Shown here piece after piece: positions 7,867 through 46,320 of a stretch of 64,000 nucleotides of DNA (the first letter of the stretch is position 1; every line of letters begins with the position of its first letter). A model generated the notes under the pieces. That model ran no database searches. It saw only the letters and a list, made by a program, of their open reading frames with translations, and was not told the DNA's origin. This DNA is from Macrostomum lignano (taxonomy: Eukaryota): NCBI GenBank assembly GCA_002269645.1, contig NIVC01002054.1:144879-208878 (forward strand). The letters are read 5' to 3'. The translations under genes were made by a program, and so were the position numbers.

Positions 7867-7923
<57 letters not shown>

Positions 7924-9210: not shown

Positions 9211-12200
9211 TCACGAGCAGCACACAGAACACGAACTGGTCCGCCGTGAGCCGACAAGGCAGCCGCCGTGAAACACGTGACCGCAACGAAAAGCTACAAA
9301 GTAACGTTCCGACTCGGCTTCAATTGACTCCGATTGAGTTGCCTCGTTAAACAGACAGCCAACGGTTAATGGTAAGCGACACCAGGCGCAATTAGTCTCG
9401 TCTGAGTCCATAGCAACGCCCCAGCAAAGATTAGCTGAAGCAATAGCTCGCGATTCAGCAGGCGTCACAGATTCGTGTTGCCTGGCGGTGGAATTTTCAG
9501 CTGCAACTCGAATGCAATCGGCTACAAAGCCAGGGATCCGGTGCTCGTTAGCGTCACCAAGCAGACTGAGCACATGGGCTGGTGACAGGCCAATTTTAAT
9601 TAGGGCCTGAGCGAGTCCATCCACAGTGACAGTGGGGCATGAGCGGCTGTCAGGCAGGACTGGATATTCAGTACCGCATTTGCCGCACCGCCGCTGCTGC
9701 TGGTGATGCGGCTGAGCAAGCCTGGAGGCCAGCATGGTGCGCAGGGCCGCCTCAGAGTTGGAGCCGCTGTCTGCGAACGGAGAGAACAGCGAGAAGGGAT
9801 GGAGCTTTTTTGAGAAGTTTGCATGCTTAGTTGCTAGGCAGTGCAATCACTGAGGTGAAATAGCAGTGAAATTTTTTTGAAATCCATTTTGCAGTGACAG
9901 GTCAGTGACTCGACAGTCAGTGATATTCCAATCAGTGACATCTCAGTCAGTGACATCTCAGTCAGTGACATTTCAATCAGTGACATCTCATTCAGTGACA
10001 TCTCATTCAGTGACATTTCAATCAGTGACAACTCAGTCAGTGACATTTCATTCAGTGACATCTCATTCAGTGACATTTCAATCAGTGACATCTCATTCAG
10101 TGAAATTTCAATCAGTGACATCTCATTCAGTGAAATTTCAATCAGTGACATCTCATTTAGTGACATTTCAATCAGTGACATCTCATTCAGTGACATTTCA
10201 ATCAGTGACATCTCATTCAGTGACATCTCATTCAGTGACATTTCAATCTGTGACCTCTCATTCAGTGACATTTCAATCAGTGACATCTCAGTTAGTGACA
10301 CGACAATCAGTGACATCTCAGTCAGTGACATCTCATTTTTGCAGCAAAATTGTAGTCTAATTCTTAGACTTCTAAAATGATGTTATAATAAAGATATCTA
10401 TAAGTGCCCAGTCACAGGCGGTCTCACGTAGCCTCAAAACTAATTGAAGTCAAACGCACATGCTTTCGAATTCTAACATCACAGAGAAATGTTAATACAC
10501 AGTTGGTTGAGCATCATCAAAACTTGTTGAAATACTGAAGTCATATATAGGCAAAAATATTTCCATCTAATTAAGGCAAAAGTTTTCTGACCAAGGAAAA
10601 GTCACGTTTGACTGCTAAGAAAAAAAATTACATAATTAGGAGCAGCAAAAGTCCAGAAAAAATCACGTGCATATTTTAATAACGCAGAAAGCAACGCAGC
10701 TCACCAACAATGTAATCCAATAGCTGGCCATTGTCCAACTGCAGGCACCAGAATGCCAAATGAGAGGTCCAACACAGCCGCTTCAATAGATGAATGGCTG
10801 GGGATAGCTGACTGGAGAGAGTGTGGGATAGGCAAGAGAAACACGCATTATTTATTTTAAGTCGGGGCTCAGCAAACTTTTTTATCTCAAGGGCCAGGTA
10901 GAAAACCTAGCGCATGACTGCGGGACAAATGGGGGAGAGGAGAGGGAATAGAGATGAGAGAAGAGAGGAGAGGAGAGAAGAGGAGAAGAGAGGAGAGGAG
11001 AGGGGGGAGGAGAGGAGAGGAGAGAGGAGAGGAGAGAGAAGAGGAGAGGAGGGGAGAGAGAAGAGGAGAGGGGAGGAGAGAGGAGAGGAGAGGAGAGGAG
11101 AGGGGGGAGGAGAGAAGAGGAGAGGAGAGGAGAGAGGAGAGGAGAGGAGAGAGGAGAGGGGAGGGGAGAAAAGGAGAGAAGAGGAGAGGAGAGGAGAGAG
11201 GAGAGGAGAGGAGAGAGGAGAGGGGAGGGGAGAAAAGGAGAGAAGAGGAGAGGAGAGAAGAGGAGAGGAGAGAGAAGAGGAGAGGAGAGGAGAGGAGAGA
11301 AGAGGAGAGGAGAGGAGAGAAGAGGAGAGAAGAGAAGAGGAAAGGAGAGAAGAGAGCTGAGAAGAGACACAAGCCTTGAGCTGGCCAGATTGCTATTGTG
11401 AAGTTTCAAATGACCCGAGGGCCGGAGGCTTCGCTAACCGGAGTTTGCCGACCCCTGCTCTAAGTAGAGTAAACTAATATTAGGCGCGTAATAAATTACT
11501 AAAAAAACTCACTGCCGTTTAACAAGGTAGCTATAAAGCTGCTGCATATCAATTTTAGGATTAGGACCCTCGCTTCGAGAACAGATTTCGTCCAGAGTGA
11601 CTTGCTGGCTAACATCCGTTAGATCGATACTGAAAGAATACCGAAAAACGCTAATTTTACTACTGGCTTAAGTTAGTAGTAAGAAAAGGCGAGAATAAAA
11701 TAGAATAGCGAAAAACGCTAATTCTATTACTTGTAACAACTATACATAAGTAGTGTAATCAGAACAATACCTTGTTGTTAAAGGAAATCGGCAGTAGTCG
11801 CAGCCTTTTTCATCGTTCATCATCGGAAAGGATTCTGAGTTGCCGTTGCACCAGCCAAAACGTTGCCCGCCAAATGCTAGAAGGCCGCGAGCGCCAAGCT
11901 GGCGCAGAGTGGCGCTCAGATCGGCGCTTGATGGCGCCGAACTGAAAAATGTACAGTAATTATTCTATATTGTTACACACTGTGACACTGGGTGTGACAT
12001 TTGGTGTGACACTGGGTGTGACATTGGATGTGGCACTGAGTGTGACACTTGGTGTGACACAGAGTGTGACACTTTATGCGACACTAAATGTGACAATGGG
12101 TGTGACACTTTATGTGACACTAGGTGTGACACTTTATGTGACACTGGGTGTGACACTTTATGTGACACTGGGTGTGACACTTTATGTGACACTTTATGTG

Positions 12201-15200
12201 ACATTGGGTGTGACACTGGGTGTGACACTTTATGTGACACTGGGTGTGACACTTTATGTGACAGTGGGTGTGACACTTTATGTGACAGTGGGTGTGACAA
12301 TGCTTGTGACACTGTATGTGACACTAGGTGTGACACTTTATGTGACACTGGGTGTGACACTTTATGTGACACTGGGTGTGACACTTTATGTGACACTGGG
12401 TGTGACACTGGGTGTGACACTTTATGTGACACTTTATGTGACACTGGGTGTGACACTTTATGTGACAGTGGGTGTGACAGTGGGTGTGACACTTTATGTG
12501 ACACTTTATGTGACAGTGGGTGTGACATTGGGTGTGACACTTTATGTGACACTGGGTGTGACACTTTATGTGACAGTGGGTGTGACACTTTATGTGACAC
12601 TGGGTGTGACACTTTATGTGACAGTGGGTGTGACACTGGGTGTGACACTTTATGTGACACTGGGTGTGACACTTTATGTGACACTGGGTGTGACACTTTA
12701 TGTGACACTTTATGTGACAGTGGGTGTGACACTGGGTGTGACACTTTATGTGACACTGGGTGTGACACTTTATGTGACAGTGGGTGTGACAGTGGGTGTG
12801 ACACTTTATGTGACACTGGGTGTGACACTAAATGTGACACTGGGTGTGACACTAAATGTGACACTGGGTGTGACACTAAATGTGACACTGGGTGTGACAC
12901 TAAATGTGACACTGGGTGTGACACTAAATGTGACACTGGGTGTGACACTTTATGTGACAGTGGGTGTGACAGTGGGTGTGACACTTTATGTGACACTGGG
13001 TGTGACACTAAATGTGACACTGGGTGTGACACTAAATGTGACACTGGGTGTGACACTAAATGTGACACTGGGTGTGACACTTTAGGTGACACTGGGTGTG
13101 TCACTTTATGTGACACTGGGTGTGACACATTATGTGACACTGGGTGTGACACATTATGTGACACTGGGTGTGACACATTATGTGACACTGGGTGTGACAC
13201 TTTATGTGACACTGGGTGTGACACTTTATGTGACACTGGGTGTGACACTTTATGTGACACTGGGTGTGACACTTTATGTGACACTGGGTGTGACACTTTA
13301 TGTGACACTGGGTGTGACACTTTATGTGACACTGGGTGTGACACATTATGTGACACTGGGTGTGACACATTTTGTGACACTACAAGCGTAACAGTTAATG
13401 TTAAGGGCTACGAAAAAGCAGACAACATCCCTAATATCTTACTTGTCAGTAGGCAGTAGAGCATTTGCCTTCTCATTAATCATGCTATCCACAAAGGAGG
13501 CAAACTCCGCTGCATTGCCGGTCAACCGGTACAACAGGAACAGCTCATCGCGTTTAAAATAATACAAATGATTTAGCAGAAAATTCTTAATGTCCGACTT
13601 GTGACTATTAAAATTTCTGAAAATAAATATAGGTCGTATGTATATATTTATCACAAAAAACTATAGTCAAAGGACTCGTTAAGTCTTACTTAATCAGTAG
13701 TAGCATAGTCTCCATAGAGGCCAAGGCGGATGGCGACCTGCCCAGACTTGACAGCAATGATTTACAGCTGGCGTCCACCAGTTTCGGCAGTTCAGAGCTC
13801 TCGCATTGCCACAGTTTGTCTGCGGTTTAACAGCGAAATAAGCTACGTTACACACTACTTTAAGTAAACAAAAAATTTAGTTTAAGATTACTATAAAACG
13901 CTATTTAGACTACTTCTAACGAAGTCGAGCATATTTCTAGCGGGATTATAGCCTAGTGGTTAGAGCGTCGGTCTCACGACGGAAAGGTCGGGGGTTCGAT
14001 TCTTAATTCACTCGGAACAATTGTTTGTCCTTGAGCACTTAACTGAGCATTGCTTCAGTTCATCCAGCTGTAAAATGGGTACCAGCATTAGCTGGGGTAA
14101 TTGAGGTTGCAATTGTTTAAAGAATAAAAAATGCTTCTAACACTACTTCAAGTAGCAAATATTCTACTTGAAATTTTCGGAAAAAATCCTTTTTACACTA
14201 CTTGCAAGTAGACAGTCAAGGATAATATTATCAAATAGCAGTTTAATCGGTAGGAAAAGTCAGATTTACTCACTCCAACAGAAACTGAGCACTTGAACAG
14301 TATCAGAAGCTTCCAGACTCAATGCTTCATCTGCTCCGCAAGCCAACCGACGAACTGTAGCCCAATCAACTTGTTGAACAAATCCGTCAGCTTCCAGATC
14401 CAGATTAGACATCAGTTCAGACTGAGGCTTGGCCGTTATAATGACAACTTTCAACAGTTCATCAATCGGTGAAGATGCTGCATTGCTGTCAATCTGACAG
14501 GCTCTGACAGGTCTGACTGTCAACCAATCAGCGTCAGTCTGCACTGATTTATCCCTAGCCGAGCCAACAGCATCGGCAACAGAAGAACCCGACAATATCG
14601 AGGCCGATGACTTATCGACAGTCAGTCTCAGAGCGACAATCCAGCCTAACAGGCAGCTTAATTCCGATTTCAATTTTTCCGCTATTGGAAACGATCTTGT
14701 TGACATTGGCAACCAGGCTGTTTGAGTCTGGGCAGTGCTAACAGGTGCACTACTACTACTAGCAGTAGTTTGACAGAATGCGCCGTTAGTAGCCAGATAA
14801 CTCAGACGCTTTCTAGATAACTCAGCCAACAGATTAGCTAAATCCAACAAGCGATTAACGCAGTCCACAGGTGCCGCCTCGGCGCTTACAAGTCTCTGAT
14901 GAAGCGTCAGGGATTCTGCTTCCAGCTTAACCAGGTCGGCCGGCTCCAGGCCGGCAAACTGGTCAGCGCCGGTCAGTTCCGACGGCGAGCCGGGCCTGCC
15001 AGCCAGAGCCCGCTTCTTCAATGACTGCGCCTTGCCGCGGAAGCCGCCGAAATTGATCGGCACCCGGAAGTCGGTCATGATCATGCCGGCCGAGACGGCG
15101 GTGACGTCGGTGCCAACGAGCTCGTCGCTAGGCGGTATGCCCGCAGCTGTAGCGGCATCGTCAGGCTTTGGCCAGTTGATGTACTGGATTAGGCGGCCAA

Positions 15201-18200: not shown

Positions 18201-21200
18201 GCTTGGGCCGGGCGGCGTAAACTTTAGCCGCCACCGCCGCCGCCGGAGCCGGGCCGGTCTCGGCGAACAGGCAGGCCCCAAACGGGCCGTTTCTTGGCTT
18301 GTCCGAGCCGAGTTGAAAAAATGTCCGACTGTCTGCGTTGCACAGCACCGCCCGGCACCTGGTGGAGACCAACAGCAGGTGCTGCTGACTGCCCCAGTCT
18401 GAGTCCAGCTGCACTATGGGACCCTCCTGCGGCAGCGTCAGCACCTGCTCGCATGTGGCGTCCAGCGCGAACAGCTCCCGGGGCTGGGCGCGGGTTTCGG
18501 CGCGGGCGGGTGTTGCAACTTTTTTTAATACTTCATTCTCGATTTAGTCTAACAGCTACTCAACATTCAGATGGGCATGGCTGCCAACCTCCCATCTCCC
18601 CCTCAGGACCCCTCCTCTCACTCTCCTCATTCCCACTTTCCTTCTCAACCCCGCTCTTAATCTCCCTCAATCTCCCTCAATCTCTCTCAATCTCCCCTCA
18701 ATCTCCCTCAATCTCCCTCAATCTCTCTCAATCTCCCCTCAATCTCTCTCAATCTTCCTCAATCTCCCTCAATCTCTCTCAATCTCCCTCAATCTCTCTC
18801 AATCTCCCCTCAATCTCCCTCAATCTCTCTCAATCTCCCCTCAATCTCCCTCAATCTCTCTCAATCTCCCTCAATCTCTCTCAATCTCCCTCAATCTCTC
18901 TCAATCTCCCCTCAATCTCCCTCAATCTCTCTCAATCTCCCTCAATCTCTCTCAATCTCCCTCAATCTCTCTCAATCTCCCTCAATCTCCCTCAATCTCC
19001 TTCAATCTCCCCTCAATCTCCCTCAATCTCCCTCAATCTCCCTCAATCTCTTTCAATCTCCCTCAATCTCTCTCAATCTCCCTCAATCTCCCTCAATCTC
19101 TCTCAATCTCCCTCAATCTCCCTCAATCTCCCTCAATCTCCTTCAATCTCCCCTCAATCTCCCTCAATCTCTCTCAATCTCCCTCAATCTCTCTCAATCT
19201 CCCTCAATCTCTCTCAATCTCCCTCAATCTCTCTCAATCTCTCTCAATCTCCCCTCAATTTCTCTCAATCTCTCTCAATCTCTCTCAATCTCCCTCAATC
19301 TCCCCTCAATCTCCCTCAATCTCTCTCAATCTCTCTCAATCTCTCTCAATCTCCCTCAATCTCCTTCAATCTCTCTCAATCTCCCTCAATCTCCTTCAAT
19401 CTCTCTCAATCTCCCTCAATCTCTCTCAATCTCCTTCAATCTCTCTCAATTTCCCTCAATCTCTCTCAATCTCCTTCAATCTCTCTCAATCTCCCTCAAT
19501 CTCCCTCAATCTCCCTCAATCTCTCTCAATCTCCCTCAATCTCCCTCAATCTCTCTCAATCTCCTTCAATCTCCCCTCAATCTCTCTCAATCTCCCTCAA
19601 TCTCTCTCAATCTCCCCTCAATCTCCCTCAATCTCTCTCTATCTCTCTCAATCTCCCCTCAATCTCCCTCAATCTCTCTCAATCTCTCTCAATCTCCCTC
19701 AATCTCCCTCAATCTCCCTCAATCTCTCTCAATCTCCCTCAATCTCTCTCAATCTCCCTCAATCTCTCTCAATCTCCCTCAATCTCTCTCAATCTCCCTC
19801 AATTTCTCTCAATCTCTCTCAATCTCCCTCAATCTCCCTCAATCTCTCAATCTCCCCTCAATCTCCCTCAATCTCTCTCAATCTCTCTCAATCTCTCTCA
19901 ATCTCCCCTCAATCTCCCTCAATCTCTCTCAATCTCCCTCAATCTCTCTCAATCTCCCTCAATCTCTCTCAATCTTCCTCAATCTCCCTCAATCTCTCTC
20001 AATCTCCCTCAATCTCTCTCAATCTTCCTCAATCTCCCTCAATCTCTCTCAATCTCCCTCAATCTCTCTCAATCTCCCTCAATCTCTCTCAATCTCTCTC
20101 AATCTCCCTCAATCTCTCTCAATCTCCTACAATCTCTCTCAATCTCCCTCAATCTCCCTCAATGTCCCTCAATCTCTCTCAATCTCCCCTCAATCTCCCT
20201 CAATCTCTCTCAATCTCCCTCAATCTCTCTCAATCTCCCTCAATCTCTCTCAATCTCCCACTGAATCCCCGCAACCCCAGCAGCACCGCCTACCGAGTCG
20301 GCCATAGAAGTAGACGACACCATTCCATCGGAGTCGCCAGAGAACAGACAGCCGGCAGTCCAGGCCACACAGGTGATTACTCTACCGGTGTGCATCCGAT
20401 TAATCCTGACCCGATCTGCCCAGCACCTGCGCTGGGTGCTGTGCAATTCGTACACCTCAACGTGGCCGTTGCTAAGGGCGCAGGCTAGATAGCGATCGTT
20501 AGGAGACAGAGCCAACAGGCGGGCCACGCCGTTATTATTGAGACTGAAGTGCAGTCGCAGCTGCAGACTGGCGGAACCAAACGGGGCGGTGAGAATTCGA
20601 ACTACTCCGGAATTTGAGCACAGGGCCAGCGAGCCGCCGCTGGTCAGAGATATCGCTGTGGTCTGCGGAGGGTGGAGTGCCGCGTTCTGTCAGACACATC
20701 GCTGTTGCGAGGTCAGTAAAGCGAGTAAAAAAAGGAAGAAAAATGGAGACAAGGGAGAGGAAGACAGTCGTGGGGGAGACAAAGGTGAGGGAGACGGAGG
20801 AGAGGGAGACAGGGGTGAGGGAGACAGGGTGAGGGAGACAGGGGTGAGGGAGACAGGGTGAGGGAGACAGGGGTGAGGGAGGCAGGGATGAGGGAGACAG
20901 GGGTGAGGGAGACAGGGGTGAGGGAGACAGGGTGAGGGAGACAGGGGTGAGGGAGGCAGGGATGAGGGAGACAGGGGTGAGGGAGGCAGGGAGAGGGAGA
21001 CAGGGGAGAGGGAGACGGGGAGAGGGAGACGGGGGAGAGGAAGACAGGGGAGAGGGTGACAGGGGAGGGGAGACAGGGGAGAGGAAGACAGGGGAGAGGA
21101 AGACAGGGGAGAGGAAGACAGGAAAGAGGAAGACAGGGGAGGGGAGACAGGGGAGAGGAAGACAGGGGAGAGGAAGACAGGAAAGAGGGAGACAGGGGAG

Positions 21201-22489
21201 GGGAGACAGGGGAGAGGAAGACAGGGGAGAGGAAGACAGGGGAGAGGTGGTGAAAGAGGTAGACAGGAGAGGGAGACAGGGGAGAGGAAGACAGGGGAGA
21301 GGAAGACAGGAAAGAGGGAGACAGGGGAGGGGAGACAGGGGAGAGGAAGACAGGAAAGAGGGAGACAGGGGAGGGGAGACAGGGGAGAGGAGACAGGGGA
21401 GAGGAGACAGGGGAGAGGGAGACAGGAAAGAGGGAGACAGGGGAGGGGAGACAGGGGAGAGGAAGACAGGAAAGAGGGAGACAGGGGAGGGGAGACAGGG
21501 GAGAGGAGACAGGGGAGAGGAGACAGGGGAGAGGGAGACAGGGGAGAGGGAGACAGGAAAGAGGGAGACAGGGGAGGGGAGACAGAGGAAAGGAGACAGG
21601 GGAGAGGAGACAGGGGAGAGGGAGACAGGGGAGAGGAAGACAGGAAAGAGGGAGACAGGAAAGAGGGAGACAGGGGAGGGGAGACAGGGGAGAGGAAGAC
21701 AGGGGAGGGGAGACAGGGGAGAGGAAGACAGGGGAGAGGAAGACAGGAAAGAGGGAGACAGGGGAGGGGAGACAGGGAGAGGAAGACAGGGGAGAGGTGG
21801 TGAAAGAGGTAGACAGGAGAGGGAGACAGGGGAGAGGAAGACAGGGGAGAGGAAGACAGGAAAGAGGGAGACAGGGGAGGGGAGACAGGGGAGAGGAAGA
21901 CAGGAAAGAGGGAGACAGGGGAGGGGAGACAGGGGAGAGGAAGACAGGGGAGGGGAGACAGGGGAGAGGAAGACAGGGGAGAGGAAGACAGGAAAGAGGG
22001 AGACAGGGGAGGGGAGACAGGGGAGAGGAAGACAGGGGAGAGGTGGTGAAAGAGGTAGACAGGAGAGGGAGACAGGGGAGAGGAAGACAGGGGAGAGGAA
22101 GACAGGAAAGAGGGAGACAGGAGAGGGGAGACAGGGGAGAGGAAGACAGGAAAGAGGGAGACAGGGGAGGGGAGACAGGGGAGAGGGAGACAGGGGAGAG
22201 GGAGACAGGGGAGAGGGAGATCAATTCAGATTATACCTAGGAAGAAGCTGCCTAATCATGTACAAGTATACCGAAAAAAGCAATAATTCCACAATAAAAA
22301 GCAAACTACGAGTAATTCAGCTCAACTCACCGTATTCCGCTGCGACAGCTTGGCAACGCTTTGAATTTTCTCATCGATTTGTTCGGCAAAGACCTGGCAG
22401 ACGGCGGATGAGGTGGCCGCTTCTGGTGGAGCAGAGGCGGTGCCATCAGCCGCAGACAGCTGCCCTGATGCAGAGGCCTCCGAGGCCAT
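9211..22489 (-). CDS. HPS5: HPS5-like (BLOC-2 subunit/pink; HPS5-TECPR2 WD40 family) protein with C-terminal RING-H2, ~1279 aa, 12 exons
   Basis: Exons (-): 22489-22331, 20686-20294, 18483-18095, 17232-17045, 16268-15827, 15283-14274, 13819-13690, 13616-13443, 11941-11771, 11629-11513, 10811-10705, 9770-9211. All introns are GT-AG, phases are consistent, total 3840 nt. HPS5-family WD40 motifs: LSPNDRYLACALSNGHVEVYEL, H.GRVITCVAW..LFSGD, IVQLD..LLVST..FFQLG..RNGPFGAC..VYAARP..RMW, and DSGIY. No TECPR repeats seen. The exon-3 acceptor is the least certain boundary. Confidence 0.85.
9890..10335. repeat. 15-bp minisatellite (tcagtgacatctcat / tcagtgacatttcaa)n in HPS5 intron 11
   Basis: About 29 copies of two alternating variants. 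Confidence 0.95.
10863..11457 (+). mobile_element. hAT (Charlie/MER58-like) MITE carrying an internal GA-rich microsatellite, HPS5 intron 10
   Basis: Left end cggggctcagcaaactttttt..aagggccag; right end ggcc..gagtttgccgacccctg. Imperfect 15-bp TIR (12/15). Flanks ttttaagt and ctctaagt (6/8, central TA) fit an 8-bp hAT TSD. Confidence 0.7.
10930..11372. repeat. (GAGAG/GAGGA)n purine microsatellite
   Basis: Pure GA tract inside the MITE. Confidence 0.95.
11975..13380. repeat. 12-bp minisatellite tgtgacac+(tggg|ttta|taaa|atta) in HPS5 intron 8
   Basis: About 115 units with a constant core tgtgacac and a variable 4-nt linker. Confidence 0.97.
13942..14102 (+). mobile_element. tRNA-derived SINE with CORE-like domain, HPS5 intron 6
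   Basis: Pol III A-box tagcctagtgg and B-box ggttcgattc. These are followed by tgtccttgagca..cttaac..cagttcatccagctgtaaaatggg, resembling the MIR/CORE consensus. A second copy lies at 57729-57892. Confidence 0.85.
15450..15760. repeat. ~16-18-bp minisatellite (aactggaaatatcccca)n, HPS5 intron 5
   Basis: About 18 imperfect copies. Confidence 0.92.
16400..17035. repeat. (ccttcaaa/ccttcacc)n low-complexity array, HPS5 intron 4
   Basis: 8/9-bp subunits forming ~17-bp and ~33-bp periods. Confidence 0.93.
17380..18060. repeat. Degenerate gggtcatag/gagtcatac repeat array, HPS5 intron 3
   Basis: Recurrent ggtcata and gagtcata motifs in an old, diverged array. Confidence 0.8.
18655..20258. repeat. 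(ctcaatctc[c/t])n 10-bp array, HPS5 intron 2
   Basis: About 1.6 kb of caatctccct/caatctctct. Confidence 0.97.
20745..22220. repeat. GA-rich (gagacagggga)n array, HPS5 intron 1
   Basis: 11-12-bp units with higher-order blocks containing ggagaggtggtgaaagaggtagacagg. Confidence 0.95.
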
Positions 22490-23340: not shown

Positions 23341-23729
23341 TCATTGAGTTTATCAATTATTTATTACAATTAAAATAAAAAAAATAAAAAAACTTTCAAT
23401 AAAGTTGATTTCAGTACACCAAAGCTAATTATGCAATTATCGAAGAAGTAACAGGTTAATCGATGCAGTTAAACCCCCTGGTGTACTTTTCCATAGCAAA
23501 GCAATGTATTTTGCACTTGAATAATTCCATTAAAATTGACAAAAAATACACGACTACACAGCAGGCCCCAACAAACGAATGAGGGAGAAGGTTATTAAAT
23601 GTGCAACGAACTACTCGTACAAAAGTCTTTTTAATTGCATAGCGAAAGAATTTAACACACGCTGCTCATATACGAGCTGGTTCCGTTCGAAGTCCCCACC
23701 TCATTCTTTAAGCTCTTTTTACTCGCCTC

Positions 23730-25862
23730 TATCTCTCACTCTACTCTCACTTATCTCTCACTCTACCCTCACTATCTCTCACTCTACCCCTCTCATCTCT
23801 CACTCTACCCCTCTCATCTCTCACTCTACCCCTCTCATCTCTCACTCTACCCCTCTCATCTCTCACTCTACCCTCACTATCTCTCATTCTACCCCTCTCA
23901 TCTCTCACTCTACCCTCACTATCTCTCATTCTACCCCTCTCATCTCTCACTCTACCCCTCTCATCTCTCACTCTACCCTCACTATCTCTCATTCTACCCC
24001 TCTCATCTCTCACTCTACCCTCACTTATCTCTCACTCTACCCTCACTTATCTCTCACTCTACCCCTCTCATCTCTCACTCTACCCCTCTCATCTCTCACT
24101 CTACCCCTCTCATCTCTCACTCTACCCCTCTCATCTCTCACTCTACCCCTCTCATCTCTCACTCTACCCTCACTTATCTCTCACTCTACCCTCACTATCT
24201 CTCATTCTACACCTCTCATCTCTCACTCTACCCTCACTATCTCTCACTCTACCCTCTATCTCTCACTCTACCCTCACTATCTCTCATTCTACCCCTCTCA
24301 TCTCTCACTCTACCCTCACTATCTCTCATTCTACCCCTCTCATCTCTCACTCTACCCTCACTATCTCTCATTCTACCCCTCTCATCTCTCACTCTACCCT
24401 CACTATCTCTCATTCTACCCCTCTCATCTCTCACTCTACCCCTCTCATCTCTCACTCTACCCTCACTATCTCTCATTCTACCCCTCTCATCTCTCACTCT
24501 ACCCTCACTTATCTCTCACTCTACCCTCACTTATCTCTCACTCTACCCCTCTCATCTCTCACTCTACCCTCACTTATCTCTCACTCTACCCCTCTCATCT
24601 CTCACTCTACCCTCACTATCTCTCACTCTACCCTCACTATCTCTCCCTCTACCCTCACTATCTCTCACTCTACCCTCACTTATCTCTCACTCTACCCTCA
24701 CTATCTCTCACTCTACCCTCACTTATCTCTCACTCTACCCTCACTATCTCTCACTCTACCCTCACTATCTCTCACTCTACCCTCACTATCTCTCACTCTA
24801 CCCTCACTTATCTCTAACTCTACCCTCACTATCTCTCACTCTACCCCTCTCATCTCTCACTCTACCCTCACTATCTCTCACTCTACCCCTCTCATCTCTC
24901 ACTCTACCCTCACTATCTCTCACTCTACCCTCACTATCTCTCACTCTACCCTCACTTATCTCTCACTCTACCCTCACTATCTCTCACTCTACCCCTCTCA
25001 TCTCTCACTCTACCCTCACTATCTCTCATTCTACCCCTCTCATCTCTCACTCTACCCTCACTATCTCTCATTCTACCCCTCTCATCTCTCACTCTACCCT
25101 CACTATCTCTCATTCTACCCCTCTCATCTCTCACTCTACCCTCACTATCTCTCATTCTACCCCTCTCATCTCTCACTCTACCCTCACTATCTCTCATTCT
25201 ACCCTCCCTATCTCTCACTCTACCCTCACTATCTCTCATTCTACCCCTCTCATCTCTCACTCTACCCTCACTATCTCTCATTCTACCCCTCTCATCTCTC
25301 ACTCTACCCTCACTATCTCTCATTCTACCCCTCTCATCTCTCACTCTACCCTCACTTATCTCTCACTCTACCCTCACTATCTCTCACTCTACCCTCACTA
25401 TCTCTCACTCTACCCTCACTATCTCTCATTCTACCCCTCTCATCTCTCACTCTACCCTCACTATCTCTCACTCTACCCTCACTATCTCTCACTCTACCCT
25501 CACTTATCTCTCACTCTACTCTCACTCTACCCTCACTTATCTCTCACTCTACCCTCACTTATCTCTCACTCTACTCTCACTCTACCCTCACTTATCTCTC
25601 ACTCTACTCTCACTCTACCCTCACTTATCTCTCACTCTACCCCTCTCATCTCTCACTCTACCCCTCTCATCTCTCACTCTACCCCTCTCATCTCTCGCTC
25701 TACCCCTCTCATCTCTCACTCTACCCCTCTCATCTCTCGCTCTATCCCTCTCATCTCTCACTCTACCCCTCTCATCTCTCGCTCTATCCCTCTCATCTCT
25801 CACTCTACCCCTCTCATCTCTCACTCTACCCTCACTTATCTCTCACTCTACCCTCACTTATC
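23730..25862. repeat. 21-22-bp CT-rich minisatellite (ctctcactctacccctctcat / ctctcactctaccctcactat)n between UBA3 and HPS5
   Basis: About 2.1 kb of two interleaved variants. Confidence 0.97.
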
Positions 25863-26031: not shown

Positions 26032-29000
26032 TTAAGTCTCCATACCGTCTTCAAGATTGAGCACAAAAGTGACGGGTTTCATGCCACTCTGAGCACTGTC
26101 AGTAACATTTAGCACTGTATTAGAAAGCAGGCCTAATTCTGCCAGAGATTTGTCTAAATTGTCAGCTAATTGATCGCGCAGAAATGACAAGTCCATGTAT
26201 AGGGTGACATCGCGACCTTCAACGCAAGCGGTGAGGCTCGGCCGTGTCATACCGTGCTCCGACTTCAATTGGTTGATGACGGTCTGCAGCGAGTCCCGAC
26301 TATTGAACGTCAGAGGCTTGGGCGGAGGCTGGCCGCACACGTCGCACTGGGGATTCCGCTCCAACGGCACAACATTCACGGCTACGCCTTCGATGTCGCT
26401 GAAGTTAGCGAAGTTGTTCAACAGCGGGTAGCAGCCGGTGATGGCTTTGAATACTTCGGTGACGCACTGGGCGCTGATGACAGCGTTGGTGGATGCCACG
26501 GCTGGAATGATGTGCTTCACTACGCCCTGAGTCAGCCGGAAATCCGGTTCCCGGATGCCGAATTGTCTGGCACGTTTGCAGGCCTCCGTGCGAATCCAGT
26601 CCACGTGGTGTGGGTCGTCTCCGTCTACGGGCACCTGGGGGTGGGCAATTTAGTGATCAGTGGGGTGGGGAATTTAGTGATCAGTGGGGTGGGCAATTTA
26701 GTGATCAGTGGGGTGGGGAATTTAGTGATCAGTGGGGTGGGCCAATTTGGTGATCAGTGGGGTGGGGAATTTAGTGATCAGTGGGGTGGGGAATTTAGTG
26801 ATCAGTGGTGTGGGGAATTTAGTGATCAGTGGGGTGGGCAATTTAGTGATCAGTGGTGTGGGGAATTTAGTGATCAGTGGTGTGGGGAATTTAGTGATCA
26901 GTGGTGTGGGGAATTTAGTGATCAGTGGTGTGGGGAATTTAGTGATCAGTGGTGTGGGGAATTTAGTGATCAGTGGTGTGGGGAATTTAGTGATCAGTGG
27001 TGTGGGGAATTTAGTGATCAGTGGTGTGGGGAATTTAGTGATCAGTGGGGTGGGCAATTTAGTGATCAGTGGTGTGGGGAATTTAGTGATCAGTGGTGTG
27101 GGGAATTTAGTGATCAGTGGTGTGGGGAATTTAGTGATCAGTGGGGTGGGCAATTTAGTGATCAGTGGGGTGGGGAATTTAGTGATCAGGTAGAGTGGGG
27201 GAATTTAGTGATCAGTGGGGTGGGCAATTTAGTGATCAGTGGTGTGGGGAATTTAGTGATCAGTGGTGTGGGGAATTTAGTGATCAGTGGTGTGGGGAAT
27301 TTAGTGATCAGTGGTGTGGGGAATTTAGTGATCAGTGGTGTAGGGAATTTAGTGATCAGTGGTGTGGGGAATTTAGTGATCAGTGGGGTGGGCAATTTAG
27401 TGATCAGTGGTGTGGGGAATTTAGTGATCAGTGGTGTGGGGAATTTAGTGATCAGTGGTGTGGGGAATTTAGTGATCAGTGGGGTGGGCAATTTAGTGAT
27501 CAGTGGGGTGGGGAATTTAGTGATCAGGTAGAGTGGGGGAATTTAGTGATCAGGTTGAGTGGGGAATTTAGTGATCAGGTTGAGTGGGGAATTTAGTTAT
27601 CAGGTTGAGTGGGGAATTTAGTGATCAGATAGAGTGGGGAATTTAGAGTGATCGGTGAAGTGGGGAATTTAGAGTGATCAGGTTGAGTGGGGAATTTAGT
27701 TATCAGGTTGAGTGGGGAATTTAGTTATCAGATAGAGTGGGGAATTTAGAGTGATCGGTGAAGTGGGGAATTTAGAGTGATCGGTGAAGTGGGGAATTTA
27801 GAGTGATCGGTGAAGTGGGGAATTTAGAGTGATCGGTGAAGTGGGGAATTTAGAGTGATCGGTGAAGTGGGGAATTTAGTGATCACATAGATTGAGGAGT
27901 TTGTTGAAAAAGAGTCGGGAATCTAGAGAAACATAGTGGGGAAATTTAATGAGTTGATGAAGGGGTAATTTAGAGAGGTAAAGTGTGGAAATTCAGTGAA
28001 GTAGAGTAGGAAATGTAGTAAGTAAGCTACAGAGAAATTGAAGAGAGTTGAAATAGCTTAGTAATTTCATAATTGGAACGGGGTATTTAGAGTGCTGAAA
28101 ATGCAGAGCTATTGTATTTAATTTAATTTTCATTCCGTTTTCATTACCTCTTCGCCGAACGGCCACTCCTGGGGCCACTGCATAATCCTGGCGAACTCGA
28201 TGCAGTGCTCTGGCAGCCGGGGAGTGTGGGCCAGAGTGCACAGAGGGAACCCCTGCTGGGTGCTGCTATAGAGGTCGGCTGTGCACTCCAGACACGGGGT
28301 GGCGTGGGCTCGAACCACCCGGCAGTGGCCCTGAAATCCTTGGGTGCCGCCGTCGATCAGGGGGATGACGCTGGTCGGAATGGGCTGATCAGACTCGTCA
28401 AATTGAACCAGGGAGCAGACTATCTGGTTGAGGCGGCGCCTGCGGGGATTGAGATTCGGCTACTCTTGTACCTGGATACAGACAGACGGACAGGCAGACA
28501 GATAGACAGACAGACAGAAAGACAGACAGACAGACAGAAGGACAGACACTCAAACAGACAGACACTCAGACAGACAGACAGACAGACAGACAGACAGGCA
28601 GGCAGACAGATAGACAGACAGACAGAAGGACAGACAGACAGACAGTCCCGCTCGCACCTGGCCTGCACGCTGTCCAGGCCGCACACGATGCACATGAACT
28701 GCCTGTAGAACTCCAACGGTTTGTCCTCCAGTTTGCCAAAGTGCGGCGTCACCCGGCAGCCGGAGACGCGGCGTTCAACAAATTCGGCAGCAACGACGGC
28801 CTTCGGCCTGCCGATGTCTTTGGGGCGGAACAGAAACTGGCGATTCAGATTGGACAGATCGATGGTGTCCATGTCGATCAGATGCAGATTGACAAAGCCG
28901 CTCAGGGCGAGGTCTTTCAGCATCTCGCAGCCGAGACCGCCAGCCCCGACAACCAATATCTGGACAAGATCTGAGCGAATCGCTGAGAATAGCTCAGGAT

Positions 29001-29091
29001 CGGGTTCGAACTCAGGACCGCCCAAGGGCCCGGCCCGCTCTAATAGCCGACGCACGTGGCGCCAACGATTGTCTGTGCCCGGCGAGCTCTG
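26032..29091 (-). CDS. UBA3: NEDD8-activating enzyme E1 catalytic subunit UBA3, ~443 aa, 3 exons; no genomic ATG found
   Basis: Exons (-): 29091-28658, 28439-28148, 26634-26032 (phases 2 and 0; 1329 nt). Motifs: [69 protein letters not shown], catalytic [37 protein letters not shown], and C-terminal ubiquitin-fold domain. Confidence 0.96.
26636..27885. repeat. 24-bp minisatellite (aatttagtgatcagtggtgtgggg)n, UBA3 intron 2
   Basis: About 50 copies, with variants drifting toward the 3' end. Confidence 0.97.
28478..28645. repeat. (CAGA)n microsatellite, UBA3 intron 1
   Basis: Tetranucleotide tract. Confidence 0.92.
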
Positions 29092-29457
29092 CTGTTGGAA
29101 TAAATTCGTTTAGCGATTTTCAAAACTACTGCTACTAAAGATACTACTACCTTAATAATTGGGTAAAACTATTGGAAAACTACACGAGAAAACCACCGCA
29201 TTGATTAAAAATCCAGGGCCTAAGCAAACTAGCACTAGAGTGTGTAGTATATGCTGCACAAGTATCGCACAATTCATCGATAAGAGCCAAGAATATAAGA
29301 TAAGAATAAGTTTGCTGTCATGCCGTTGCAGCATTTGACCGATTTATATCCAAGCACCTGCGAAGTACTGCACTTGCTTTGCGTTTAACCAACTCTTCCA
29401 GAAACCCTAAGCAAGAAATCAATTCTTTTTTTCTGAAAAAAAAAGCAATCCGAAACA

Positions 29458-30964
29458 ATGCGAGGCCTAATATTTCTAACCGCTGACAATTCTTTGAAGT
29501 TGAAGAACGATCTGCAAGATCCAAAGCCGAACAGCGAAGAGGTCGTAGTACGGGTTAGCCATTGCGGAGTATGCGGTACAGACCTGCACATCATGCAAGG
29601 TCACTTTCCCGTGGCTGTGGAGACTCAACTAGTCCTGGGCCACGAGTTCACCGGCTGGCTGCAGGAAGCGAATACCGATAGCAAGAAAAATCAAGACGGA
29701 AACTTCGGCACTCCCGTGTTTGTCAATCCGAATGGTCGGTGCGGCTACTGCATCGGTTGCCAAGAGGTTTGTTTCACTTAGCAACACAGTGAAATAATAA
29801 ATATTCGGACAAAAGCTGCGGGCACCCTGACGCAAGGTCTTCGGAGACATCGTCTCACAACCAGAGTTGACGGCAATTTTGTCCATTTCGCTGACTCCTA
29901 AGCACAAACAAGCGCACCAATACTGTACGCAAGCACGCACTCACACACGCTCACACAGGGGTGGACAGCGGCCCTCTGACTTTCGAATCGTCAGGCACGA
30001 CACCCACGGTGCGTTAAAAGCTGGCCCTCACTGGTGTGAATCGCACGACAACCACTCAACCAACTTGGTTGCACACGGAATCAAACCAGGGGTCGTTTTG
30101 CTAGAGTCAGACGGGTTTACCGCTGAGCTGCTCTGCCCCTAGCAACAGGCATTGCATAAACCAGCCTTAATGAATTTTTCCGTGAAAAAACACTCGATCA
30201 AAACACCCTATTAGGGCCGAGTGCACTTCTGCGGCTACCGAGCTATGGGTGCCGCTTCAGTGGGCGTCGGTCGAGACGGCGGCTGGGCGGAGTTCGTGGC
30301 GGTGCCAGCCAATCAGGTTCACCGAATGCCTAAAGATCTGCCGATGTCAACTGGAATTCTGGTTGAGCCAATCAGCTGCGTGCTTCACGGCTACGATCGG
30401 CTGTTCACCGCTGGAGCAGCCAAGCAGCTGGACCCAACTGACTCTGTGCTCATTCTGGGTGCTGGCATCATCGGTCTGCTTTGGGCCTGCCTGCTGCACC
30501 AGCGTGGCTACCGGACCATTCACATCAGCGACATTTCTCCGGAGCGACGCCAGGTCGTTACTAACATGAAATTAAACGGCATGTCGCCTAAACAACCAAC
30601 CGAGCTGCTTAGCAACACCTACCAGCTGATCGTGGACTGCACCGGAGTGCCAAAGGCGCTCGAGTCGGCCTATAAAAGCCTGTCTAGCGGTGGCATCCTG
30701 TGCGTGTTCGGATGCGCACCAGAGGGAGTCAAGCTGAACCTGCCGTATTATGACCTGGTCAACCGAGAGATCACCGTTGTGTTTTGTCGCGTTAATCCGT
30801 TCACAAGCGACCGAGCTATCGACCTGACGCGTCGTTTACATCTGGACGGCTACCTGGACTTGGACCGGCTGGGCATTAAGGTATTCGGACTCGACCAGCA
30901 TCAGCAAGCCTTTGAAATGCTGAACAATCGTCAGGCACCTAAGGTTGCCTTCCGGCTAAACTGA
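29458..30964 (+). CDS. Zn-dependent medium-chain dehydrogenase (threonine/sorbitol/arabitol-DH-like), copy 1, ~352 aa
   Basis: Exons 29458-29766 and 30215-30964 (phase 0). Motifs: CGVCGTDLH (catalytic Zn), VLGHEFTG, structural Zn CGYCIGCQEGRVHFC, DGGWAEF, EPISC..HG and Rossmann ILGAGIIG. Confidence 0.93.
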
Positions 30965-31632: not shown

Positions 31633-32766
31633 ATGCGCGGCCTAGTGTTTGTAACTAGCGACAGCTCACTACAGCTGCAGGATGATATTCAAGTGCCTAA
31701 GCCGACTTCTGAAGAGCTACTAGTACGGGTTAGCCACTGCGGTGTATGCGGAACAGACCTGCACATCATGCAGGGCCATTTCCCGGTGGCTGCTCGATCT
31801 ACTCTCGTACTCGGACACGAGTTCACTGGCTGGCTAATTGATGGCGATGGAAGCCAGCCAAGTAAAGGCAAATCCAACACGCCTGTTTTTGTCAATCCGA
31901 ACGGACAATGCGGCTACTGCAACGAGTGCCAACGGGTAAAACTTTCATGGAAGCATTTAATTGACATTTGAAATGCACTACTGGATAGAAAGACAAGTTT
32001 TTGCATATCATTGCAGGGTCTGGTGCACTTCTGCCCCCAGCGTACCTTAGGCGCTGGAGCTGTAGGTCTGGCAAGAGACGGCGGCTGGGCGGAGTTCGTG
32101 GCGGTGCCAGCCAATCAGGTTCACCGAATGCCTAAAGATCTGCCGGTGTCAACTGGAATTCTCGTTGAGCCAATCAGCTGCGTACTACACGGCTACGATC
32201 GGCTGTTCACCGCTGGAGCAGCCAAGCAGCTGGACCCAACTGACTCTGTGCTCATTCTGGGTGCTGGCATCATCGGCCTGCTCTGGGCCTGCCTGCTGCA
32301 CCAGCGGGGCTACCGGACCATCCACATCAGCGACATCTCTCCGGAGCGACGCCAGGCTGTTGAAAACTTGAAACTTGACGGCGTGTTGCCTAGGCAACCA
32401 ACCGAGCTGCTTAGCAACACCTACCAGCTGATTGTGGATTGCACCGGAGTGCCAAAGGCGCTCGAGTCGGCCTATAAAAGCCTGTCTAGCGGTGGCATCC
32501 TGTGCGTGTTCGGATGCGCCCCGGAGGGAGTCAAGCTGAACCTGCCGTATTATGACCTGGTCAACCGAGAGATCACCGTTGTGTTTTGTCGCGTTAATCA
32601 GTTTGCTAGCGATCGAGCCATCGACCTGACGTACCAGCTGCACCGACAGGGTTACCTGGACTTCAACCGGTTGGGCATTCAAGTCTACCCACTCGATCAG
32701 CACCAAAAAGCATTCGAAACGTTAGGCAAGCGTCAGGCACCGAAGGTGGCCTTCCAACTGGGCTGA
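31633..32766 (+). CDS. Zn-dependent medium-chain dehydrogenase, tandem copy 2, ~350 aa
   Basis: Exons 31633-31935 and 32017-32766 (81-nt GT-AG intron at the same position as copy 1). Same motifs as copy 1. Confidence 0.93.
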
Positions 32767-33462: not shown

Positions 33463-35298
33463 TCAATCGAAAGCGGCTCTTTTACGCTTAGCTCCAACAA
33501 TTAATTTTTGCACTTCAACAGCTTTGCTCGCCTCCGAATGAGTTGGATCCACGTGATAATTTGGATCGGTGAACAGCGCGCCAAATCGTTCGTCGGCTGC
33601 CACATCGGCTGCTGTCACTGCCGAGTGAGCACCTGCGACCCGGTCGGCAACTAGCATTGCCAACTCCTGCTCACTAGCCGGCATTTCTCCTTCGCCTTCG
33701 CCACTGTCACCTTCGTCACTATCGCCGCTGCCGCCGGCTCCGTCAGCCTTAGAAGGCAGCAGGCCAGCTTTAGCCAGTTTAGCCCGTTTCGCTTGCTCCT
33801 TTAATCGGCGACGCCTCGTGCGCTTGCGAGATTCTTTCGGCTCCGATTGCTCCTGCTGCTTCTGGCCCTTGGCACTTGACTTGGCCTTAGCATCGACGTC
33901 CTGCATGGCTAAAGCGATATCGTCGGGCAGCTCGTCGTCTGAGAAGGTGGCCGGCAACTCGCTGCCATTGTCGGCGTTATCTTCGGCTTTGTCGGCTCCG
34001 ACATCGTCTCCTAACAGCGCCCGACGAAGCTTCACCGTTCTGGCTTTGATGGCGTCACTGTCCTCTTCATCATTGTCGGATTCATCGCTACTCAAATTGA
34101 GAAACTCCGACAGTCTATTAAGATCCGGATCGTCTTCGTTGAAATCGGTCTTGTTGAACAGGCCCTGCAGGTAGCGAGTTCGCTCAGTCGGTGTCTCGTC
34201 CCAGGTTAGGCCGACTTTTGTACGGTTTAATAGACCAGCGGTTAGTTTGCGCGGCTTATAAGCAGCCGGGTCCAGACCCGTGCACCGCGTTACAAGATGA
34301 CGCCACTCGTCTGGCACATCGTCCGGACCGCCGAACTCCATACCCGCCGGCACGTAGCTCAATCTAAGACACCCGCCGGTGCTTTCCACCTCTAGACCGG
34401 AGCACTGCTCATAGACACTGGTTGCGGCTGGAGTGCAATCAAACTCCGCTACAGCGTAATAGTACCACAATCGTTTTAGCTGGTAGCGTCGAAGACTTCG
34501 ACGATAAGAGCCAGACGAAGTTGACGACTTCTTAGCCGGATCGGACGACGCTTTTCGGCGCAACTCCAACGGTCCCGCTTTGGCCTCTTCGGCCATTCGA
34601 CGTTGACCGAATTTCGAGGGATAAACTGTGACACTTAGCAAGCGACCAACAGACGATGGACAGTGACTGGAGAGCAGCATAAACAGATCGGTAGCTTTGA
34701 TCTGCTCCCAGTCTTGCTGAGTAACAGCTAGTCGATTTGTTGGAACAACCGACTGGTCGTTTTCTTCATCAATCGCTGCGCTGGACGAGCGTTCGAGATT
34801 GCGAAACTCCTCGTCGCTGCTGCTTCTCGCTTCGCTGTCGCTGCCTTCTTCATCATTGTCTGCCTCATTTTGCTCATCATCATCATCATCCTCTTCATCT
34901 GAGTCGGATTCTTCCTCAGCTACTTCTTCATCTTCTTCGTCTTCATCCTTATCCACAGCATCCTCACTCTCTTGATCTTCTTGGTTGTCAGAACTAGCTT
35001 CGACCTCATCATTATCATCCTCATCCTCACCGTGACGACCCTGTTTCAATCCGTAGAACCTGCTCAGATCCTGTCGCGAGCTCATGGCCACTGGCCTGCC
35101 CCTCTTATCGCTGCGTACGCTGGTGGAGAACTCAGGATCTGTAAACATGGCGCCAAATCGATCGTCAATTTCAACGCGAGTTGCTTTGCGAGCCGAAGCC
35201 GATCGATAGCGCGGATCGGTGGTCACGTGACCGAAGCGCGGATCCGAGCGCCATTCTTCGTCGCGGTTGCCTGCTGCGTTGCGACGCTTCTTAACCAT
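33463..35298 (-). CDS. ESF1: ESF1 (pre-rRNA processing nucleolar protein, NUC153 domain), 611 aa, intronless
   Basis: N-terminal DPRF...IDDRFGAMFTDPEF..DKRGRP, then an acidic tract. Core motifs: TNRLAVTQQDWEQIKATDLF, VTVYPSKFG..RMAEE..GP, LRRYQL.RLWYYYAV, Y..C.GLE.E, LTWDETP..R. C-terminal DERFGALF.DPNYHVDPT (NUC153). Confidence 0.93.
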   Translation of the reverse strand: MVKKRRNAAGNRDEEWRSDPRFGHVTTDPRYRSASARKATRVEIDDRFGAMFTDPEFSTSVRSDKRGRPVAMSSRQDLSRFYGLKQGRHGEDEDDNDEVEASSDNQEDQESEDAVDKDEDEEDEEVAEEESDSDEEDDDDDEQNEADNDEEGSDSEARSSSDEEFRNLERSSSAAIDEENDQSVVPTNRLAVTQQDWEQIKATDLFMLLSSHCPSSVGRLLSVTVYPSKFGQRRMAEEAKAGPLELRRKASSDPAKKSSTSSGSYRRSLRRYQLKRLWYYYAVAEFDCTPAATSVYEQCSGLEVESTGGCLRLSYVPAGMEFGGPDDVPDEWRHLVTRCTGLDPAAYKPRKLTAGLLNRTKVGLTWDETPTERTRYLQGLFNKTDFNEDDPDLNRLSEFLNLSSDESDNDEEDSDAIKARTVKLRRALLGDDVGADKAEDNADNGSELPATFSDDELPDDIALAMQDVDAKAKSSAKGQKQQEQSEPKESRKRTRRRRLKEQAKRAKLAKAGLLPSKADGAGGSGDSDEGDSGEGEGEMPASEQELAMLVADRVAGAHSAVTAADVAADERFGALFTDPNYHVDPTHSEASKAVEVQKLIVGAKRKRAAFD

Positions 35299-36908: not shown

Positions 36909-46320
<9,412 letters not shown>

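What the first reader, a model, noticed from the sequence alone, without database searches (positions are those of the whole stretch)
28658..29460. UBA3 lacks a start codon: candidate for an initiator AUG donated by a spliced leader
Seen: the conserved UBA3 N-terminus ([19 protein letters not shown]) is open back to an in-frame TAA at 29112-29110 with no ATG. A phase-0 acceptor (ttccaacag|cag) sits immediately upstream. I found no convincing ATG-bearing exon in the ~350 bp before the divergent dehydrogenase start. Established: flatworm spliced leaders end in AUG, which can act as the initiator Met. Inference: this essential gene may depend on trans-splicing to be translated.
Basis: partly seen in the sequence, partly recalled or inferred. 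Interest (0 to 1): 0.7.

Follow-up and report, generated by a model that had tools for sequence, protein, structure and literature searches.

The report
Flatworm UBA3 gene lacking its own ATG
In this Macrostomum lignano flatworm window the essential NEDD8-activating enzyme gene UBA3 has no start codon of its own. It most likely borrows the AUG at the end of the trans-spliced leader, a mechanism already known in flatworms, but the public annotation of this same locus offers a rival start in a small exon 2.7 kb upstream.

Summary
The window is Macrostomum lignano contig NIVC01002054.1 (assembly Mlig_3_7). UBA3 lies on the minus strand. Its first exon opens at a tandem acceptor, ttccaacAG|CAG|AGC (29091 / 29088). 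An in-frame TAA sits at 29112-29110. The first in-frame genomic ATG is at 28923-28921, after the GAGGLG nucleotide-binding motif.

The published M. lignano spliced leader ends in ATG. Joined at either AG it is in frame and gives M(Q)SSPGTDNRW, which lines up with the start Met of other flatworm UBA3 proteins.

Indirect support comes from two annotation sets. Two near-identical homeologous copies carry GenBank CDSs marked 5'-partial, and one of them starts exactly at AG#1. UniProt models start exactly at AG#2. Locus tags also place UBA3 as the next gene after ESF1 in one transcriptional unit, and the annotation pipeline cuts such units at leader sites.

GenBank's model for this locus (PAA61255.1) has a cis-spliced 21-nt ATG exon at 31779-31759. 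That exon is antisense to the distal dehydrogenase, has a weak GTCTGT donor, and is used in only one of three identical loci.

I could reach no RNA reads, so the choice between trans and cis stays inferred. The mechanism is known (Cheng 2006), so this is an ordinary new example.

The parts
28658..29091 (-). UBA3 coding exon 1. It can also start at 29088. It encodes (Q)[12 protein letters not shown]...GLDSVQA and has no in-frame ATG before 28923-28921.
29089..29100 (-). Tandem (NAGNAG-type) 3' splice acceptor ttccaacAG|CAG|. Both AGs are phase 0. It is the presumed spliced-leader acceptor, and AG#2 is the acceptor of the annotated cis intron.
   Evidence: identical in all three homeologous loci
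29110..29112 (-). In-frame TAA that closes the reading frame 6 codons upstream of acceptor #1.
28921..28923 (-). First in-frame genomic ATG (residue 57). It lies downstream of the GAGGLG motif, so starting here would truncate the adenylation domain.
29092..29457 (.). Divergent intergenic region between UBA3 and the proximal dehydrogenase, and the proximal part of the presumed outron. It holds no usable ATG exon.
28440..28657 (-). UBA3 intron 1 (GTGCGA...CGCAG), mostly a (TGTC)n microsatellite.
28148..28439 (-). UBA3 exon 2. It includes the catalytic-Cys region [16 protein letters not shown].
26635..28147 (-). UBA3 intron 2, filled by a 24-bp minisatellite of about 51 copies.
26032..26634 (-). 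UBA3 exon 3 through the TAA stop. It carries the E2-binding domain.
29458..30964 (+). Proximal Zn-type alcohol/glucose-dehydrogenase-like gene ADH-1 (exons 29458-29766 and 30215-30964, 352 aa). It has no GenBank gene on this contig and lies inside the annotated UBA3 'intron'.
29584..29604 (-). Proximal copy of the antisense 'exon': GTGACCTTGCATGATGTGCAG|GTCTGT. It has the same donor as the annotated exon, but it has no ATG and an in-frame TAG lies at 29631-29629.
31759..31779 (-). Cis coding exon of GenBank model PAA61255.1: ATGGCCCTGCATGATGTGCAG|GTCTGT (MALHDVQ). It is antisense inside coding exon 1 of ADH-2 and is spliced over 2,670 nt to 29088.
31633..32766 (+). Distal dehydrogenase paralog ADH-2 (PAA61254.1, BOX15_Mlig009135g1, 350 aa; intron 31936-32016).
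33463..35298 (-). ESF1/NUC153 homolog (611 aa, single exon) on the same strand as UBA3. In the homeologous loci its locus tag shares the transcriptional-unit prefix with UBA3, which takes the next gene number.

Best explanation
UBA3 of Macrostomum lignano is a trans-spliced gene. Its pre-mRNA probably begins far upstream, in the same transcriptional unit as ESF1, and runs antisense through the two dehydrogenase genes. It is cut at the tandem acceptor ttccaacAG|CAG| (29091 / 29088), and the 35-nt spliced leader is joined there. The leader ends in AUG and both acceptors sit on a codon boundary, so the leader's AUG becomes the first, in-frame start codon. The protein is then [11 protein letters not shown]... 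or [10 protein letters not shown]....

Shown here:
- The genomic reading frame has no ATG.
- The frame arithmetic works at both acceptors.
- The resulting N-terminus fits the orthologs.
- Independent gene models have 5' ends at the two AGs.

Inferred, not shown: that the leader is actually joined here, and that ribosomes start at its AUG.

A minor cis-spliced form from a cryptic donor at 31759 probably coexists with the trans-spliced form.
For: - No genomic start. TAA lies at 29112-29110 and the first in-frame ATG at 28923-28921, after the GAGGLG motif. All three homeologous loci are identical here.
- The M. lignano leader ends in ATG. About 30% of all genes and 45% of human-conserved genes are trans-spliced (PMC8629364).
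- PAA82304.1 (locus L002) is a 5'-partial CDS whose first base is the base after AG#1. UniProt A0A1I8HX37, A0A1I8GA94 and A0A1I8GWM5 start at the base after AG#2. If those transcripts ran further upstream, the open frame would have been extended toward the TAA.
- Locus tags link ESF1 and UBA3: ESF1 is Mlig006702g1 or Mlig002698g2, and UBA3 is Mlig006702g2 or Mlig002698g3. The TBONE pipeline splits transcriptional units into genes at leader-read peaks and poly(A) sites (PMC5730564).
- The leader-initiated N-terminus aligns Met-to-Met with trematode UBA3, for example MSSVTNTSRW and MTKVDWSKRW.
- There is precedent. In S. mansoni the leader AUG is in frame in 28% of trans-spliced transcripts and more than 40 cDNAs need it (Cheng 2006, as cited in PMC9851317). 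Macrostomum genome annotators note that the leader carries the start ATG (PMC10468722).
- No phase-0 ATG exon with a consensus GT[AG]AG donor exists in the 4,371 nt up to the ESF1 stop.
Against: - I saw no leader-containing read, cDNA or peptide. The protein collection holds no M+QSSPG... or M+SSPG... sequence and no M. lignano transcript-derived fragments.
- The acceptor does not match the enriched trans-splice motif [T/C]TNCAG, although only about 44% of known sites do.
- GenBank's model of this exact locus is a complete CDS with a cis ATG exon.
- The third copy's partial CDS (PAA55670.1) starts 12 nt inside the exon, not at an AG.
- An in-frame leader AUG has a 1-in-3 chance of occurring by accident.
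Confidence: 0.65

Rival explanations
1. The productive mRNA is cis-spliced. A short upstream exon at 31779-31759 supplies ATG GCC CTG CAT GAT GTG CAG. This exon is antisense within coding exon 1 of the distal dehydrogenase ADH-2. It is spliced across a 2,670-nt intron, which contains the whole proximal dehydrogenase, to acceptor #2 (29088). The protein is then MALHDVQ-SSPG..., as in GenBank PAA61255.1. Under this reading trans-splicing is not needed for translation.
For: - The transcript-derived GenBank model for this contig has exactly this structure.
- The ATG has a good context (gggaaATGG).
- GT-AG borders and phase are correct.
- Non-consensus donors such as GTTTGT and GTAAAA occur in neighbouring genes.
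- Flatworm leader acceptors are often also used in cis, at 66% of sites on average (PMC12582326).
Against: - The same exon and donor are present in all three homeologous loci, but only one model uses them.
- An identical donor, CAG|GTCTGT, lies much closer at 29584. It would give a transcript with no ATG and an in-frame TAG.
- The donor is one of 101 'any GT' phase-0 candidates, so sequence alone does not distinguish it.
- If the transcript starts after the ESF1 poly(A) site, up to 25 upstream ATGs would precede this ATG.
- Models in this tandem-duplicate region are visibly unstable. There is a chimeric ADH model in L002, and ADH-1 is unannotated in L001.
- MALHDVQ makes the N-terminus 5-6 residues longer than in the orthologs.
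Confidence: 0.2
2. Both routes are used to a real extent. Read-through transcripts from the ESF1 unit are either trans-spliced, giving the leader-AUG start, or cis-spliced from the cryptic 31759 donor. The result is two UBA3 N-termini from one shared acceptor.
For: - Both kinds of model exist in the public annotation of near-identical copies.
- Sharing of acceptors between cis- and trans-splicing is reported as common in flatworms.
Against: There are no quantitative data. Cis use at acceptors that resolve polycistrons is reported to be rare.
Confidence: 0.1
3. Translation starts without any donated or upstream AUG. It would use a near-cognate codon (for example ACG 29109-29107 in unspliced RNA, or GTG in RHVRR) or the internal ATG at 28923. 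Alternatively, this copy is a non-functional homeolog, or the assembly lacks the true first exon.
For: - The genome has three or more copies of the locus, so one could be decaying.
- Near-cognate starts exist in eukaryotes generally (general knowledge; not tested here).
Against: - All three copies share the same structure with intact reading frames and 98.4-98.7% DNA identity.
- Starting at the internal ATG would remove the GAGGLG motif.
- There is no sign of an assembly gap.
Confidence: 0.05

Closest known systems
[quoted passage not shown]
   Same: - The leader ends in AUG.
- The acceptor is on a codon boundary.
- The recipient reading frame has no AUG of its own before conserved protein sequence.
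- The predicted protein matches ortholog N-termini.
   Different: The precedent was shown experimentally in Schistosoma mansoni. Here the species is the free-living Macrostomum lignano, and both the leader join and the translation start are inferred, not observed. A cis-spliced alternative with its own ATG is annotated at the same acceptor.
Downstream genes of flatworm or nematode operons resolved by spliced-leader trans-splicing
   Same: UBA3 shares a transcriptional-unit name with the upstream same-strand gene ESF1 and takes the next gene number. Its model starts at a splice acceptor.
   Different: The spacer is 4.37 kb and contains two genes on the opposite strand. Published M. lignano operon criteria require less than 1 kb (after subtracting repeats) and no interruption by opposite-strand transcripts (PMC8629364). 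It is therefore not an operon by that definition.
Acceptor sites shared between cis- and trans-splicing (PMC12582326; Ciona, Matsumoto 2010 as cited there)
   Same: One acceptor (29088) is annotated with a cis donor in one copy, while sister copies start at the acceptor.
   Different: Relative usage is unknown here. The cis exon is unusual in lying antisense inside another gene's coding exon.

Membership tests
Genes translated from the spliced-leader AUG (Cheng 2006 class) | The organism's spliced leader ends in AUG | tested here: met
   The published M. lignano leader is CGGTCTCTTACTGCGAAGACTCAATTTATTGCATG (PMC8629364). The organism was identified by 100% protein and DNA identity to Mlig_3_7.
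Genes translated from the spliced-leader AUG (Cheng 2006 class) | The leader is physically joined to the acceptor in front of the reading frame | not testable with these tools
   No RNA reads or cDNAs were reachable. The evidence is only indirect: model 5' ends at AG#1 and AG#2, and transcriptional-unit naming together with the TBONE method.
Genes translated from the spliced-leader AUG (Cheng 2006 class) | The leader AUG is in frame with the conserved reading frame | tested here: met
   Both acceptors are phase 0. ATG|CAG AGC gives MQSS and ATG|AGC TCG gives MSS.
Genes translated from the spliced-leader AUG (Cheng 2006 class) | No genomic in-frame AUG between the acceptor and essential protein sequence | tested here: met
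   The first ATG is at residue 57, after GAGGLG. An upstream in-frame TAA closes the frame.
Genes translated from the spliced-leader AUG (Cheng 2006 class) | No alternative cis exon supplies the AUG | tested here: inconclusive
   There is none in the 367-nt intergenic region and none with a consensus donor in 4.37 kb. However, GenBank PAA61255.1 uses a cis ATG exon at 31779-31759.
Genes translated from the spliced-leader AUG (Cheng 2006 class) | Translation actually initiates at the leader AUG | not testable with these tools
   This needs ribosome profiling, N-terminal proteomics or a reporter assay.
UBA3 / NEDD8-activating enzyme E1 catalytic subunit | ThiF adenylation domain, C-terminal E2-binding domain and catalytic-Cys segment, with orthology to animal UBA3 | tested here: met
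   Pfam ThiF scores 179.9 bits and E2_bind 35.2 bits. Identity to trematode, lancelet and mollusc UBA3 is 53-55% over 95-100% of the length. The [16 protein letters not shown] segment is present.
Operon downstream gene (M. lignano criteria of PMC8629364) | Same-strand neighbour less than 1 kb away (repeat-adjusted), not interrupted by opposite-strand genes | tested here: not met
   The ESF1 stop at 33463 and the acceptor at 29091 are 4,371 nt apart, with ADH-1 and ADH-2 on the other strand between them.

The most novel reading that the evidence does not exclude
UBA3 protein in M. lignano would be made in two N-terminal forms from one shared acceptor. One form starts at the AUG donated by the spliced leader. 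The other starts in a 7-codon exon that lies antisense inside the coding exon of a dehydrogenase gene 2.7 kb away. The balance between them, or strict dependence on the leader, would couple neddylation capacity to trans-splicing activity in stem cells.
Probability: 0.15. Interest if true: 0.4.

Novelty: new member of a known kind. Interest (0 to 1): 0.22.

Why it matters
If confirmed, this is a clean example outside the parasitic flatworms of an essential, conserved enzyme whose only start codon comes from the spliced leader. That would be useful in three ways:
- It would help correct the '5'-partial' gene models in the M. lignano annotation.
- It would guide the design of transgenes from trans-spliced genes in this transgenic model.
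- It bears on why all flatworm leaders keep a terminal AUG.

It does not reveal a new mechanism.

Tried and rejected
- **Spliced-leader RNA gene in the window.** There is no match to the 35-nt leader with up to 3 mismatches. Rfam finds only a weak tRNA hit.
- **Transcript-derived proteins that would show the leader join.** A search with the N-terminal 74 residues found only distant fragments. Exact look-ups of M+QSSPG... and M+SSPG... found nothing. The collection appears to hold no M. lignano RNA-seq assemblies.
- **Supplementary tables.** I searched those of PMC5816591, eLife 20607 and PMC12582326 for the gene IDs or UBA3, with no hits. PMC8629364 has no supplement held. The Wasik 2015 paper is not held.
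- **Comparison of the three homeologous loci for informative divergence.** They are 98.4-98.7% identical overall and identical at the acceptor, so they say nothing about constraint.
- **A cis ATG exon in the 367-nt intergenic region.** This was rejected. No candidate has a consensus donor, and the only decent donor (AAG|GTAGTA) follows a stop codon.
- **The proximal antisense copy of the annotated exon (29604-29584).** It has no ATG and an in-frame TAG.
- **Scans of metagenome or prokaryotic genome collections for the leader-UBA3 junction.** I did not run these, because those collections cannot contain it.
Full report
**What the window is.** The assembled three-exon protein is 100% identical to Macrostomum lignano UniRef A0A1I8HX37, 'NEDD8-activating enzyme E1 catalytic subunit'. 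It is 53-55% identical to trematode and other animal UBA3. The DNA around the finding is 100% identical to GenBank contig NIVC01002054.1 of assembly GCA_002269645.1 (Mlig_3_7), and the window is that contig's last 64 kb. Two further loci, L002 (NIVC01000481.1) and L003 (NIVC01002721.1), are 98.4-98.7% identical. This fits the known hidden polyploidy of this strain (PMC8629364).

**Checking the observation.** UBA3 lies on the minus strand.
- Exon 1 runs from 29091 (or 29088) to 28658, exon 2 from 28439 to 28148, and exon 3 from 26634 to 26032.
- Upstream of exon 1 the frame reads TAA (29112-29110) ACG AAT TTA TTC CAA CAG | CAG | AGC. This is a tandem CAGCAG acceptor with both AGs on codon boundaries.
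- The first in-frame ATG is at 28923-28921, residue 57. That is after the GAGGLG nucleotide-binding motif, so it cannot give a functional enzyme.
- The divergent Zn-dehydrogenase-like gene ADH-1 starts at 29458 on the plus strand.
- The 367-nt spacer holds four ATGs. None forms a phase-0 exon with a credible donor.

**The leader.** The published M. lignano spliced leader is CGGTCTCTTACTGCGAAGACTCAATTTATTGCATG. About 30% of all genes and 45% of human-conserved genes receive it (PMC8629364). It is not encoded in the window. Joined at 29091 it gives ATG CAG AGC (MQSS...). Joined at 29088 it gives ATG AGC TCG (MSS...). Both are in frame. In an N-terminal alignment these forms align Met-to-Met with trematode orthologs, for example MSSVTNTSRW in Fasciolopsis and MTKVDWSKRW in Paragonimus.

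**Indirect evidence that the acceptor is a leader site.**
- The GenBank CDS of copy L002 (PAA82304.1) is flagged partial, and its first base is the base after AG#1.
- Three UniProt entries from an independent annotation begin at the base after AG#2.
- A third GenBank copy (PAA55670.1) is also partial but starts 12 nt further in.
- The frame is open for six more codons upstream. A transcript model reaching further 5' would therefore have produced a longer partial CDS. The model 5' ends must sit at the AGs.
- The Mlig_3_7 annotation was built by assembling 'transcriptional units' and cutting them into genes with the TBONE pipeline, at peaks of leader-containing reads and at poly(A) sites (PMC5730564).
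- Locus tags show that the same-strand upstream gene is Mlig006702g1 / Mlig002698g2, while UBA3 is Mlig006702g2 / Mlig002698g3. That gene is an ESF1/NUC153 homolog at 33463-35298. The two share a unit and have consecutive gene numbers.
- The dehydrogenases belong to another unit, Mlig009135, on the other strand.

This is what one expects if UBA3 is released from a longer precursor by trans-splicing. That conclusion is inferred, because I could not see the read tracks.

**The complication.** GenBank's model for this very locus (PAA61255.1, BOX15_Mlig029981g3) is a complete CDS starting MALHDVQ|SSPG.
- Its first coding exon is ATGGCCCTGCATGATGTGCAG|GTCTGT at window 31779-31759.
- It is spliced over 2,670 nt to acceptor #2.
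- The exon lies antisense inside coding exon 1 of the distal dehydrogenase paralog ADH-2 (31633-32766).
- The 'intron' contains the whole proximal paralog ADH-1. ADH-1 has no GenBank gene on this contig, and its exact protein is not in the collection.

Several points make me rate this model as a minor or precursor-derived form:
- The exon and donor are present in all three loci, but only one model uses them.
- An identical donor context, CAG|GTCTGT, lies at 29584, five times closer. Its exon reads GTGACC instead of ATGGCC, with an in-frame TAG at 29631-29629.
- The donor does not fit the GT[G/A]AG consensus. It is one of 101 phase-0 ATG-to-any-GT possibilities in the 4.37 kb, and none of those has a consensus donor.
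- Gene models here are unstable across the copies, with a chimeric ADH in L002.

Against dismissing it:
- Neighbouring genes do use weak donors such as GTTTGT and GTAAAA.
- In parasitic flatworms an average of 66% of leader acceptor sites also show cis-splicing (PMC12582326).

**How it most likely works.** A precursor that runs through or starts upstream of the ADH pair is trans-spliced at the CAGCAG acceptor. The leader's capped 35 nt form the whole 5' UTR, and its terminal AUG is the initiator. Some precursors are probably cis-spliced from 31759 and could yield a 6-residue-longer protein. I put 0.65 on the leader AUG being the main start, 0.2 on the cis exon being the main start, 0.1 on substantial dual use, and 0.05 on other explanations.

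**Comparison with what is known.** This is the mechanism demonstrated by Cheng et al. 2006 in Schistosoma mansoni. [quoted passage not shown] All reported flatworm leaders keep the terminal ATG (PMC12582326). Macrostomum annotators explicitly kept the ATG when trimming leaders because it is a start codon (PMC10468722). The locus is not an operon by the published M. lignano criteria, because the spacer is 4.37 kb with opposite-strand genes in it.

**Verdict.** The feature is real and correctly described. A transcript-based public model at the same locus contradicts it in part. The mechanism is already known, so this is a new member of a known kind and of low to moderate interest. Counting leader-joined against cis-junction reads in the existing RNA-seq data would settle it.

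Noticed in passing
window 29458-30964 (+) and 31633-32766 (+); L002 2322-5633; L003 2311-5749: There is a tandem pair of Zn-dehydrogenase-like paralogs. The public models differ among the three near-identical loci. ADH-1 has no gene on this contig, one L002 model spans both copies (chimeric), and L003 has one truncated and one 5'-partial model. This looks like annotation instability caused by multi-mapping reads.
   Followed up: partly
window 31759-31779 (-) versus 31633-31935 (+): The annotated UBA3 ATG exon overlaps the coding exon of ADH-2 on the opposite strand. The ATG GCC that creates the start differs from the proximal copy's GTG ACC only by changes that are synonymous in the dehydrogenase (GGC CAT versus GGT CAC, both Gly-His).
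   Followed up: partly
window 28440-28657 and 26635-28147 (-): Both UBA3 introns are almost entirely simple repeats. Intron 1 is a (TGTC)n microsatellite. Intron 2 is a 24-bp minisatellite of about 51 copies, and it creates long spurious reading frames on both strands.
   Followed up: no
whole window, e.g. 5894-7934 (GACA x512), 18659-20259 (10 bp x159), 23726-25858 (21/42 bp), 11981-13381, 20745-22220, 43628-45137: Roughly a third of the 64 kb (about 22 kb, from a hand sum of non-overlapping high-scoring arrays in the table) is tandem-repeat arrays. These explain the extreme GC/AT-skew blocks in the composition profile.
   Followed up: no
window 16-532, 1329-1567 and 51259-51488: The same 28-bp repeat unit (CAGATCCTCAGTTGCTGGGCCAGCCTCC) forms arrays at three separate places about 50 kb apart. 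It may belong to a dispersed element.
   Followed up: no
window 57823-57892 (-): A weak tRNA match in Rfam (32.6 bits against a gathering score of 29) that ARAGORN does not call. It may be a tRNA-derived repeat or a pseudogene.
   Followed up: no
window 29326-29331 (+): A TTGCAG that matches the published trans-splice acceptor motif lies 127 nt upstream of the ADH-1 ATG. It is near the 5' end of the L003 ADH-1 model, but that model starts 1 nt before the AG boundary, so it is not clear evidence of trans-splicing.
   Followed up: partly
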